Part shown: in pieces, positions 1 to 2,234 of the stretch
Layout: each line of letters begins with the position of its first letter
Position numbering within the stretch: position 1 is the stretch's first letter
DNA from: Podarcis pityusensis
Taxonomy: Eukaryota
DNA length: 64,000 bases
Reading direction: 5' to 3' (one strand)
NCBI GenBank assembly: GCA_964106645.2
Contig: OZ067040.1
Notes under the pieces: model-generated
Databases searched by the model: none
The model's input: the letters and a program-made list of their open reading frames with translations, nothing else
What the model was told of the DNA's origin: nothing
Program-made: the position numbers and the translations under genes

Positions 1-1131
1 CAAACAACAATTCAGTCCCGGCACAACGTAGACCTCTTGCTCCTCCTGTAAAGGAGAAAAAAGACATGTTAGCCACAGCAGAAACCGACTTTCTCATTCC
101 GTCTGCTAACATCACAGTTGTTCCTGTTGAAAACAGCCCTGCAGTTCCGCATTTCGCCAGCAGGCTCGCTTAGCAGGTGCTGACCAACAGCAGTATTCAA
201 AACCCAGTGTGTCACCGTGTCCTGGCTGGAGTTGTTCTTCACAGTTGCCATAGAAGCAGTGATAAGAAAACAACCCTCCCCAGCGTCTGAACCACGTCTT
301 TCCCTTGCGTTCCCACGCTGGCCTCCTCTCCGAGACTGGTTCCCATGGGAACTCAGCTGGTTGACCTTGGGACCTTCCTGCCCAGCTGTCTCCGCTCTCC
401 ATGGGCAGCAACGACGAACTCCAGTGGAAAAACACTGCCCGGGGCTCCTCCCAGCTGGCTTGGCCCTCCTTCTCCGGAAAAGCACTCCTTGCCAGCTCCG
501 CCCCCTCTGGCCTGGCACCCACTGCGGCTTTCTGGGAACCTGCTTTGTTGACATTCCACTCCAGCACGCACAGTGGAAAACTTTTACACTTGCCTTTGGA
601 ATCCTTCGCCCCCCCGATCTGCTCACTAGCACTCCTTGAGGCTAAAACATCAGGAACAGGGGCACCAGCCATCTCCAGGCTTTTCTCAATACTTCTCCGG
701 GGCTCTGGCCTCCTGCTGAAGCTTCACAGCACATCCCAGGCAGCCCTTGCTGACTTTATGCCCTTGCCCAACGTCTTAGAGTGAGCTGTTCAATCGGAAC
801 GTCCTCCAAGACCTGGCCGCCTGCCATAGTCTTCCGTTCTCCCAAGGGGCCCCAAGCTGTACTCACAGATTACAAGCTCCTCCGGCACCCATCCGTGGGG
901 AAACGATTTTCCAGCTGCTCTCAGCTCCCAGCACTCAGCTCTCAGCACAGGCAAACCTCTGTGTCTTTCAGCCAGCTGCTCTCAGCTCCGCAGCTCTCCT
1001 TTGCCTCTTAACACCAGGCAAAAATCTCCGCTGCGTCCTGCCGGCTTTCTCTGCCTTAGACCGCAGACTTCAAACGCATTCCGGCACTTCAAAGCGTTCC
1101 TGTGACAGTTTTTACGATCGGTGATTAAGCA

Positions 1132-1140
1132 CCCATAACC
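1132..1140 (-). promoter_or_regulatory. Copia-type primer-binding site complementary to tRNA-iMet nt 31-39 (half-tRNA priming)
   Basis: GGTTATGGG immediately follows the LTR terminal CA; it is the reverse complement of CCCATAACC in the iMet anticodon arm. Confidence 0.8.
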
Positions 1141-1295
1141 TGTTGAATTGATTTATTGCTGAGGCGTGACTGGAGAGCTACTGGAGACGGAGCTGAGTGG
1201 CGCAGCTCGGAGGAAGCGCGCCGGGCATAAAGAGCTAATTGTGGATCGTAAATCAATTAGCGGGGGTCACGCCAAACCAATAAATCAATTCAACA
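1141..1295 (-). repeat. 155-bp 5' LTR of the copia element (TG...CA) with 30-bp imperfect terminal inverted repeats
   Basis: Begins TGTTGAATTGATTTATTG and ends CAATAAATCAATTCAACA (18/18 inverted, 27/30 when extended); abuts the PBS. Confidence 0.8.
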
Positions 1296-2234
1296 GTTTG
1301 CACTTTAACTACCTGTAGTTTTTAATCTAAGGACTCAGCTATACAGCTGCAAATAAAACAGTGTTTTAAGTGCAATATACAATGTTACACTAGATAGCGA
1401 TAGTGAGCCTTATGCTAAGTTCAATGTATTTTTAAAAATGTTTTCTTTTTTTAAAAAAAAAAGCATTTTCAGAACGATTTTTATATTTGTGTAGATTCCA
1501 CCTAAGTGCCCTGAAATGTATCCATACCAATATTTATTTGCCCCCAAGTATTTAAAATTTAATTCTCAAATCTGAGCAAATGCTTGGTGTTAGTAAAGTG
1601 GCCGATGACCACTTAAATCAAATGTAGCAACACACTAAAGCACATGTATTATGCAATCACATTCTATGAGAATCCTCTTATTCAGATTAGAATAAGAAAT
1701 GTGCCAGAGAACAATACCCACAATATTCAAGAGGCTACTTATATCCCTCAATGCAACTATGCCATTGTCTCCCCAACTAACAGGAAGAATCCCAGATCCG
1801 TAACAAAAAAGACAACACTGTAGATGCATGCATATGTTAATAACCTGAAACAATTCATTCTGAAAACCTAGAACTTAATTCAGCTTGCATAAACTTTAAA
1901 CATTAACCTTCACTGAAGTTGCAGAAAACCACCTCAATGATCTTTGTTTACTAAGGTAGCTGGTGACCACAGATATATTTTCTAGTGCTTACAAGAAAAT
2001 TGAAATTGTATTTGACAAGAGAAGTCAACGTGTCACACCTGTACACAACCAGCTGTCCTGTATACTACACCATTTCTACCCCTATTTCTAGGACCAGAAA
2101 AAAGTTTTTCCTTAAACTTCCAGCATTTGGCTTCATTGGATGGTCAAAATTATAGAATTAGAGTTATTCTTCCTACCATACATGATTTTCTACATCCTTA
2201 TCATCACTTCTTGGCTTTTTGGGTAAGATCAAGT

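What the first reader, a model, noticed from the sequence alone, without database searches (positions are those of the whole stretch)
1132..1260. Copia LTR carries the complement of the rest of its tRNA primer: candidate bipartite PBS or tRNA-derived LTR
Seen: the canonical PBS is only 9 nt (GGTTATGGG, pairing with tRNA-iMet nt 31-39). Inside the LTR the plus strand reads AGCTGAGTGGCGCAGC (1191-1206), a 5-nt spacer, then GGAAGCGCGCCGGGC (1212-1226). Established: vertebrate tRNA-iMet begins AGCAGAGTGGCGCAGC-GGAAGCGTGCTGGGC-CCATAACC, and Drosophila copia is primed by the 5' 39-nt fragment of tRNA-iMet. The two LTR blocks match tRNA nt 1-16 (15/16) and nt 17-31 (13/15). Both mismatches in the second block are T>C, which would be G-U wobbles in the element RNA:tRNA duplex. 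The match decays exactly over the part the PBS covers, then a T-loop-like TGGATCG reappears at 1242-1248 inside a perfect 8-bp hairpin (GCTAATTG/CAATTAGC). Inference: PBS plus LTR together complement essentially the whole 39-nt half-tRNA primer. With the 3' LTR copy the primer would bridge the two ends of the genomic RNA, as with the bipartite PBS of yeast Ty3. Alternatively the LTR captured a tRNA-iMet gene whose A/B boxes give an antisense Pol III promoter, analogous to 5S-containing Cassandra LTRs. I know of no description of this in a vertebrate copia family, but I cannot search.
Basis: partly seen in the sequence, partly recalled or inferred. Interest (0 to 1): 0.85.

Follow-up and report, generated by a model that had tools for sequence, protein, structure and literature searches.

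The report
tRNA-iMet-derived LTR, inverted in this copy
The short repeat at the end of this reptile jumping gene does contain a decayed copy of the initiator methionine tRNA, but in normal family members it points the same way as the element, so it cannot pair with the tRNA primer; it only looks complementary here because this copy is rearranged.

Summary
The sequence match is real. Window 1191-1230 (+) aligns to tRNA-iMet nt 1-37 (score 40; 0 of 5000 shuffles reach it). CCCATAACC at 1132-1140 is a copia-type primer site on the minus strand.

The "complement of the primer" reading holds only for this copy. An independent contig of the same family (L001), contigs of a second species and raw RNA reads of a third all show the normal arrangement. 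There the tRNA-like strand has the same sense as the primer site and internal region. The element RNA then carries a tRNA look-alike, not its complement. In L001 nothing except the 12-nt primer site complements tRNA-iMet.

The window copy is a chimera. Positions 1-1156 are the element on the minus strand, ending with the last 16-18 nt of its LTR. Positions 1157-1295 are LTR positions 14-151 on the plus strand. The perfect 18-nt terminal inverted repeat is a product of this junction.

The closest known kind is Helenus (Kojima 2024): non-autonomous LTR elements with tRNA-derived LTRs. This family differs: it is in an amniote, has a copia-type half-tRNA primer site, derives from the same tRNA that primes it, and is too long and T-run-rich for Pol III. 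The bipartite primer site is not supported. The scan noted this LTR before on other DNA (s1-717102).

The parts
1..1131 (-). Internal, apparently non-coding part of a non-autonomous copia-type LTR element. Its sense strand is the window's minus strand, and it runs off the left end of the window.
   Evidence: 92% identical over 1183 aligned columns to L001 130-1295 in reverse orientation. Word depth is hundreds to thousands of times the single-copy level in three species. No Pfam family matches the ORFs, and the 186-aa ORF frame is not kept in L001.
1132..1140 (-). Primer-binding site GGTTATGGG, complementary to tRNA-iMet nt 31-39 (half-tRNA, copia-type priming).
   Evidence: In L001 the site is GGTTATGGACCC, 11 of 12 complementary to nt 28-39.
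1141..1158 (-). Last 16-18 nt of the LTR (U5 end), in the same orientation as the primer site. It is the left arm of the apparent terminal inverted repeat. The TG at 1157-1158 is shared with the next part.
   Evidence: It is the reverse complement of 1278-1295. The junction was read from the alignment with L001.
1157..1295 (+). LTR positions 14-151 in the opposite orientation to the primer site. The first 13 nt of the normal LTR (TGTGTTCAACTC...) are missing.
   Evidence: 134 of 134 aligned bases identical, with 1 gap, to L001 22-155 in plus orientation. The most abundant unitig of run X1 (depth 6611) has CTGTGTTCAACTC before 1157.
1191..1230 (+). Sequence derived from the tRNA-iMet 5' half: nt 1-16, a 5-nt insert, nt 17-31, a 2-nt deletion, then CATAA. 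It contains the A-box region.
1216..1232 (+). GCGCGCC-GGG-CATAAAG: consensus matches to a BREu-like and a TATA-like box, built on the decayed anticodon arm. Function is inferred, not shown.
   Evidence: L001 81-97, offset 1135.
1234..1261 (+). 8-bp hairpin whose loop holds the T-loop/B-box-like TGGATCG-T-AAA.
1279..1284 (+). AATAAA, 11 nt before the LTR end in this copy (12 nt in L001).

Best explanation
**What it is**
Window 1191-1261 (+) is a decayed copy of the initiator methionine tRNA. It makes up roughly the middle half of a very short (151-nt) LTR of a high-copy, non-autonomous copia-type retrotransposon of a reptile. Given where amniote Copia occur, the host is probably a squamate.

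**Why it cannot be a second primer site**
In normal family members the tRNA-like strand has the same sense as the element RNA, the primer site and the internal region. It therefore cannot base-pair with the tRNA-iMet half that primes reverse transcription.

**Why this copy looks different**
In this copy the LTR body is inverted relative to the primer site. The minus-strand element keeps only the last 16-18 nt of its LTR. At a shared TG it joins LTR position 14 onwards on the plus strand. That creates both the 18-nt terminal inverted repeat and the apparent complement of the primer.

**Inferred, not shown**
- Origin: the module was captured from the tRNA-iMet packaged for priming, by a template switch during minus-strand synthesis. 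This would explain why it is the same tRNA as the primer and why it is sense-oriented.
- Role: it is kept because it now forms the U3/core promoter. The decayed anticodon arm reads as BRE-like plus CATAAAG, about 50 nt before AATAAA.
- Loss of the anticodon part: this also removes a sequence that would otherwise pair with, and block, the primer site just downstream.
- Rearrangement: the most economical origin is a strand switch late in reverse transcription, ending in a run-off at a U5 end. That would leave integrase-type CA ends on both termini.
For: **The match to tRNA-iMet**
- It is far beyond chance.

**The normal orientation**
- In L001, the LTR body matches in plus orientation (135 aligned columns, 99.3%, one gap) and is followed directly by GGTTATGGA and 1.1 kb of internal sequence that matches the window's minus strand.
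- An organism B contig of depth 235 runs from the internal part through the primer site to 1158 and then continues as the reverse complement of the LTR 3' part.
- Organism B also shows 'opposite strands' joints at 1144/1272 and 1158/1277.
- Four raw RNA reads of organism D carry the joint 1146/1271 (all).
- RNA read direction flips between the internal part (first mate on +, 47 against 6) and LTR 1227-1288 (first mate on -, 15.5 against 2.3). This is what co-oriented normal copies would give when laid on an inverted copy.

**Nothing else pairs with the primer**
- In L001 only the primer site complements tRNA-iMet.

**Constraint on the LTR body**
- It has 0 mismatches in 134 bases between two subfamilies whose internal parts differ at 44 of 1106 aligned bases plus 63 gap columns.
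- No listed variant falls in 1050-1231 in three species.

**Pol III cannot make the genomic RNA**
- The sense strand has 8-9 runs of T4-T6. The first, a T5, lies about 115 nt after the LTR in both copies.

**Promoter-like motifs**
-.

**The kind is known**
- PMC10886601.
Against: - Only one full independent contig (L001) could be fetched. The other evidence is short contigs and a few reads from related species.
- Whether the window's junction is unique, a propagating sub-lineage or an assembly error was not tested. The single read-laying run showed no X1 contig across 1156/1157 in the window's form, but most pieces were not listed.
- The element's other end lies outside the window, so the 3' LTR, polypurine tract and target duplication were not seen.
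- The promoter reading rests on consensus matches only.
- The RNA run is from a relative, and 92% of its laid reads run on into unlike sequence.
- The identity of the LTR body between subfamilies could reflect LTR exchange rather than selection.
- The tRNA 3' half used for comparison was typed from my own knowledge.
Confidence: 0.72

Rival explanations
1. Helenus/Cassandra-type Pol III module. In normal orientation the A box and the B-box-like T loop recruit TFIIIC and Pol III, and this is why the module is conserved.
For: The best-kept parts include the A-box region (nt 8-19) and GGATCG of the B box. Kojima proposes this role for tRNA-like LTRs. The LTR body is invariant between subfamilies.
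Against: Pol III would stop at the T5 about 115 nt after the LTR, and at 8-9 T runs in all. It could make only a roughly 220-nt RNA, never the genomic RNA of about 2.8 kb. The B box carries a 1-nt insertion that displaces the invariant A58 and C61 (my reading). The A box is split by the 5-nt insert. No small-RNA data were available.
Confidence: 0.2
2. One reading: in a sub-lineage with this inverted LTR, the complement of tRNA-iMet nt 1-31 in the element RNA acts with the 9-nt site as an extended or bipartite primer-binding site.
For: In this copy the minus strand carries the complement of nt 1-31 (score 33) about 50 nt upstream of the primer site. Both mismatches in block 2 would be G-U pairs. 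AATAAA is kept on the element's sense strand.
Against: Every other copy seen has the opposite orientation. The sequence is letter for letter the normal LTR body (134/134), so the two T>C changes were not selected in this orientation. The inverted copy has no TATA-like box on its sense strand. The complement lies 5' of the primer site, so the primer would have to be displaced from its own template.
Confidence: 0.05
3. The inversion is an assembly error, or the result of two events: a nested insertion of one copy into the LTR of another, followed by deletion of the resulting palindrome.
For: High-copy, near-identical LTRs invite misjoins. Only a 2-nt microhomology (TG) marks the junction. No read evidence for the junction was listed.
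Against: There are no gaps or N in the window. Both sides of the junction are otherwise clean family sequence. A misjoin at 2 nt of homology is unusual for long-read assemblies. This was not tested.
Confidence: 0.15

Closest known systems
Helenus (TRIMp3), non-autonomous LTR retrotransposons with a tRNA-derived sequence in the LTRs (Kojima 2024, PMC10886601)
   Same: Short LTRs (151 nt here) contain a non-functional tRNA-derived sequence in the element's sense, with the A- and B-box regions best kept. The element is non-autonomous and high in copy number. As in Helenus, the tRNA-like sequence is not complementary to the element's own primer site. [quoted passage not shown]
   Different: Helenus was not reported in amniotes. 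Vertebrate Helenus use the 3' ends of tRNA-His, Leu or Lys and look Gypsy-dependent. Helenus is 311-1263 bp, whereas this element is at least 1.66 kb in L001 and about 2.8 kb according to earlier unchecked notes. It has many T runs, so Pol III cannot make its RNA. Here the module derives from the same tRNA that primes the element.
Cassandra (plant TRIM with a 5S rRNA-derived sequence in the LTRs) and Ajax
   Same: A small-RNA gene fragment sits inside both LTRs of a non-autonomous LTR element.
   Different: Those carry 5S rather than tRNA. They are under 900 bp, and Cassandra is reported to be transcribed by Pol III (PMC10886601).
Bipartite or extended primer sites: Ty3 (5'-3' bipartite PBS) and Ty1 boxes pairing with the T and D arms of tRNAiMet (own knowledge; Ty3 review PMC5371799 listed, not read)
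   Same: In this one rearranged copy only, a second stretch complementary to the primer lies outside the primer site.
   Different: In normal copies the stretch has tRNA sense and cannot pair with the primer. No other complementarity lies above the shuffle null.
Half-tRNA priming of Drosophila copia and yeast Ty5 (cited in PMC10886601, section 3.6)
   Same: The primer site is complementary to the anticodon stem-loop of tRNA-iMet (nt 31-39; nt 28-39 in L001).
   Different: No tRNA-derived LTR is described for those elements.

Membership tests
Helenus / TRIMp3 | tRNA-derived sequence inside the LTR | tested here: met
   Score 40 against a shuffle maximum of 31, 0 of 5000. The same sequence is in the L001 LTR.
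Helenus / TRIMp3 | tRNA-like strand in the sense of the element, so that boxes A and B could drive its transcription | tested here: met
   Met in the normal arrangement (L001, organism B contigs, organism D reads). Not met in this window's copy, which is inverted.
Helenus / TRIMp3 | TRIM size (311-1263 bp in the paper), short enough for Pol III | tested here: not met
   L001 holds the LTR plus 1.5 kb of internal sequence without reaching a 3' LTR. There are 8-9 T4-T6 runs on the sense strand.
Helenus / TRIMp3 | Conserved box A (TRGCY...YGG) and box B (GGTTC) | tested here: inconclusive
   The box A region reads TGGCG..(5-nt insert)..GG. Box B reads GGATC, as in iMet, but with a 1-nt insertion after GGATCG.
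Helenus / TRIMp3 | Two LTRs, a primer site and a polypurine tract | tested here: inconclusive
   The 5' LTR and primer site were seen (window, L001). The 3' LTR and polypurine tract lie outside both sequences. Two LTRs are reported only in unchecked note s1-717275.
Ty1/copia superfamily | Primer site complementary to the anticodon stem-loop of tRNA-iMet (3'-truncated primer) | tested here: met
   GGTTATGGG at 1140-1132. 11 of 12 in L001.
Ty1/copia superfamily | Copia-type pol remnants or gene order | tested here: inconclusive
   No Pfam hit in the window's ORFs. Only a sub-threshold SH3_retrovirus match (E 0.072, 13.5 bits against a cut-off of 27) at the cut end of L001.
Ty1/copia superfamily | 5-bp target-site duplication | not testable with these tools
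   The other end of the element lies outside the window.
Bipartite primer-binding site (Ty3-like) | A second segment of the element RNA complementary to the primer tRNA, present in family members | tested here: not met
   In L001 the only complementarity above the shuffle null is the primer site itself. The normal orientation gives tRNA sense.
tRNA gene | Cloverleaf with acceptor, anticodon and T stems | tested here: not met
   ARAGORN finds 0 genes. Rfam gives no tRNA match at E<=10. The fold is no cloverleaf, z -1.54.

The most novel reading that the evidence does not exclude
The sense-oriented tRNA-iMet look-alike in the LTR is a working mimic rather than a fossil or a promoter. A non-autonomous element would use it to be recognised by the machinery of its copia partner that selects and packages tRNA-iMet, or by tRNA-binding host factors. 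This would explain why it copies the very tRNA that primes it, why the D arm and T loop are kept, and why only the part that would mask the primer site is lost. As a side branch, inverted-LTR copies like this one would carry a ready-made extended primer complement.
Probability: 0.08. Interest if true: 0.8.

Novelty: new variant of a known kind. Interest (0 to 1): 0.4.

Why it matters
- It corrects an attractive but wrong mechanistic reading. The complement of the primer is an accident of one rearranged copy.
- It extends the recently described class of LTR elements with tRNA-derived LTRs to amniotes and to an animal copia-type lineage. This example does not fit the Pol III promoter explanation, and the tRNA copied is the element's own primer.
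- That pairing hints that the tRNA was captured from the particle's packaged tRNA pool during reverse transcription. This origin differs from the SINE-insertion origin proposed for Helenus.
- Such LTRs scatter hundreds of initiator-tRNA look-alikes in squamate genomes, which matters for tRNA gene annotation.

Tried and rejected
- **No second copy in the window.** Pattern searches and blastn of 1-1300 against the window found only the unit's own inverted arms.
- **No copies in the public collections searched.** Exact-pattern scans for two LTR-body patterns gave 0 hits in metagenome contigs and viral contigs.
- **Protein route to other copies.** Exact look-ups of the two 186/187-aa ORFs found nothing on record. 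The LTR-spanning ORF had no candidate. The search of protein representatives with P0001 returned only itself. One word-index search gave the single useful contig, L001.
- **Earlier findings by sequence:** blank.
- **Chance resemblance:** rejected.
- **Functional tRNA gene:** rejected.
- **Primer read-through as the origin.** Copying the half-tRNA primer during plus-strand strong-stop synthesis would put the complement of the tRNA on the sense strand, downstream of the primer site. The normal copies show sense orientation inside the LTR, so I rejected it.
- **Simple inversion between the 8-bp repeats GGCGTGAC/GTCACGCC.** Rejected, because the 4-nt spacers next to them (CTGA and AAAC) are in plus orientation too.
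- **MITE or DNA transposon.** I considered this because of the 18-34-nt inverted ends. I rejected it once the left arm proved to be the LTR end attached to the primer site.
- **Not attempted.** No consensus of the family was built.

Full report
**1. The observation**

The letters are as described.
- CCCATAACC lies at 1132-1140.
- It directly abuts a 155-nt TG...CA unit (1141-1295) with perfect 18-nt inverted ends. The inverted repeat extends to 34 nt at 88%.
It gives 15/16 and 13/15 matches around a 5-nt insert and then, after a 2-nt deletion, CATAA.
- The local score is 40. In 5000 shuffles the mean is 13.9, sd 2.2 and maximum 31, and no other tile of the window exceeds 25.

The match does not end exactly where the primer site begins. 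The T-loop-like TGGATCG-T-AAA inside the 8-bp hairpin is modest when its position is ignored: 180 of 5000 shuffles reach its score. It does sit within about 2 nt of the collinear position, so derivation from a whole tRNA rather than the 39-nt half is likely. The 3' half of the tRNA used for this comparison was typed from my own knowledge.

It is not a tRNA gene. ARAGORN finds none, Rfam has no tRNA match at E<=10, and the fold is no cloverleaf (z -1.54).

**2. The family**

Reads and contigs of four public runs were laid on 700-1600.
- Both the LTR and the sequence to its left are repeated hundreds to thousands of times. In X1 the word depth is 3,000-49,000, against about 26 in the single-copy flank.
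- The family is present in at least three related species (coded organisms A, B and D).
- Depth drops at about 1296-1319, so the repeat ends at 1295 and continues leftwards.

This fits a 5' LTR plus primer site of an element on the minus strand. The sequence left of the LTR is not purine-rich, so it is not a polypurine tract. The ORFs in 1-1131 have no Pfam family, and the 186-aa ORF is not kept in frame in the related copy. The part of the element seen here therefore appears non-coding.

Earlier first-reader notes on other pieces of this genome, which I did not check, describe three things:
- non-autonomous copia elements of about 2.8-2.9 kb (s1-717275, s1-717222);
- the same LTR as an initiator-tRNA mimic (s1-717102), so the scan has met this before;
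- the host as a reptile.

Among amniotes, Copia are reported only in Lepidosauria, and squamates hold record copy numbers, all of the Mtanga clade (PMC11889832).

**3. The decisive comparison**

A protein search with the window's 186-aa ORF returned one Logan protein. Its 1664-nt contig became L001.
- L001 130-1295 matches window 1170-1 on the minus strand at 92%.
- L001 22-155 matches window 1157-1291 on the plus strand at 99.3%.

Reading L001 gives a 151-nt LTR. It starts TGTGTTCAACTC and ends AATTCCCACA. The tRNA-like sequence is in sense. It is followed directly by GGTTATGGACCC (11 of 12 complementary to tRNA-iMet nt 28-39) and the internal region.

So in L001 the tRNA-like strand and the primer site are co-oriented. 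The window instead has two parts.
- 1-1156 holds the internal part, the primer site and the last 16-18 nt of the LTR, all on the minus strand.
- 1157-1295 holds LTR position 14 to the end, on the plus strand. A shared TG (1157-1158) marks the junction.

The 18-nt inverted ends are thus the same LTR end present twice, once in each orientation.

**4. Which arrangement is normal**

answers this independently of L001.
- The most abundant X1 unitig over 1157-1245 (depth 6611, no differences) is preceded by CTGTGTTCAACTC. That is the L001-type LTR start.
- An organism B contig of depth 235 runs from the internal part through the primer site to 1158. It continues GCGTGACCCC, the reverse complement of the LTR 3' part.
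- Two further organism B contigs give 'opposite strands' joints at 1144/1272 and 1158/1277. Four raw RNA reads of organism D give 1146/1271.
- A 182-nt organism B contig (depth 91) holds the plus-strand LTR followed by letters that fit the primer site.
- RNA read direction flips between the internal part (first mate mostly on +) and LTR 1227-1288 (first mate mostly on -). Transcripts of co-oriented copies would give exactly this when laid on an inverted one.

L001 cannot be a k-mer chimera, because the two contexts share only 18 exact bases. No evidence for the window's junction in other copies was listed, but most pieces were not shown.

**5.

In normal copies the element RNA carries tRNA-sense sequence, which cannot pair with the primer. 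I scanned L001 for complementarity to the whole tRNA. The only notable match is the primer site (score 19, within the null range, but at the expected position abutting the LTR). The next best scores (18, 16, 14) also lie within the shuffle null, which has mean 17.2 and a 95th percentile of 21.

The window's LTR body is letter for letter the normal one (134/134). The two T>C changes therefore did not arise as G-U-preserving changes in the antisense context. The bipartite primer site is not supported.

Kojima made the same negative observation for Helenus. He found no complementarity between the tRNA-like LTR sequence and the primer site.

**6. What the module may do (inferred)**

*Constraint.* The LTR body has 0 mismatches in 134 bases between two subfamilies. 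Their internal parts differ at 44 of 1106 aligned bases plus 63 gap columns. At 4% divergence the chance of no mismatch is about 0.004. No listed variant falls in 1050-1231 in three species, although 49 rows were not shown. LTR exchange between subfamilies is an alternative to selection.

*Pol III.* Pol III cannot make the genomic RNA. The sense strand has 8-9 runs of T4-T6, and the first, a T5, lies about 115 nt after the LTR in both copies. The B-box-like motif has a 1-nt insertion, and the A box is split by the 5-nt insert. A Helenus/Cassandra-type role could therefore yield only a short RNA.

*Pol II.* In normal orientation the decayed anticodon arm reads GCGCGCC-GGG-CATAAAG, which is BRE-like plus TATA-like. 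AATAAA lies about 50 nt downstream and 12 nt before the LTR end. This is my preferred reading at roughly 40%, but it rests on consensus matches only. The inverted window copy lacks a TATA-like box on its sense strand, so it is probably inert.

*Loss of the anticodon part.* An intact anticodon arm in sense orientation would be complementary to the primer site about 60 nt downstream and could mask it. That would explain why this part in particular decayed.

**7. Origin (inferred)**

Three origins were weighed.
- Primer read-through during plus-strand strong-stop synthesis would give the complement of the tRNA, downstream of the primer site. That is not what normal copies show.
- A template switch of minus-strand synthesis onto packaged tRNA-iMet gives a sense copy in U3. 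It also explains why the tRNA is the element's own primer species.
- Insertion of a tRNA-derived SINE, as Kojima proposes for Helenus, would leave that coincidence unexplained.

**8. The rearranged copy**

Three explanations remain.
- *Strand switch.* Late in reverse transcription, after copying 16-18 nt of U5, synthesis switches onto minus-polarity DNA at a TG and runs off at a U5 end. This gives CA ends on both termini, so the product could be integrated. It predicts a normal LTR at the far end.
- *Two events.* One copy inserts into the LTR of another, and the resulting palindrome is then partly deleted.
- *Assembly error.*

None could be tested, because the far end is outside the window.

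**9. Comparison and novelty**

The closest known kind is Helenus/TRIMp3 (PMC10886601). This family meets the defining feature, a tRNA-derived sequence in the LTR in sense orientation. It fails the size and Pol III features.

It is new in several respects:
- an amniote host;
- a copia-type half-tRNA primer site in an animal;
- derivation from the priming tRNA itself.

Full-text searches found no description of it. I rate it a new variant of a known kind. Interest is moderate.

**10. Limits and rules**

- Organism names were coded by the tool and are not known to me.

Noticed in passing
window 1320-1420: The flank right of the LTR is itself a very high-copy repeat. Summed word depth is about 43,000 in X1, 19,000 in X2 and 21,600 in X13, against about 26 (X1) and 12 (X13) for single-copy sequence. 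It holds a near-palindrome at 1348-1374. Many contigs end or diverge at 1326-1361. It looks like a SINE or MITE.
   Followed up: no
window 1227-1288: The last third of the LTR (hairpin plus end) has 3-15 times the depth of the tRNA 5'-half-like part (1165-1226) in organisms A and D. In D it mostly carries 1232T and 1242A and diverges after 1265. Other LTR families, perhaps including the autonomous partner, seem to share only this part.
   Followed up: partly
L001 1590-1664: The reading frame at the cut end of the contig gives a sub-threshold match to the retroviral polymerase SH3-like domain (PF25597, E 0.072). This may be a remnant of a copia integrase C-terminus about 1.45 kb into the element.
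   Followed up: partly
L001 10-35 (normal LTR start; window 1157-1170 holds its end): The first 20 nt of the normal LTR contain CTCTGCT, identical to the 3' acceptor strand of tRNA-iMet. The following TGCTGAGGCG resembles tRNA nt 2-12. This may be the rest of a second tRNA-like copy, but the score is within the shuffle null.
   Followed up: partly
window 911-936 and 972-998: A 27-nt direct repeat (93%) in the internal region. Contigs of several runs skip or vary here: joints 835/963 and 928/996, and an insertion after 920.
   Followed up: no
window 1024-1066: Twenty RNA reads of organism D replace 41 nt with CTCCTGCC. This is an expressed length variant of the leader in that species (tables 5 and 5c).
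   Followed up: no
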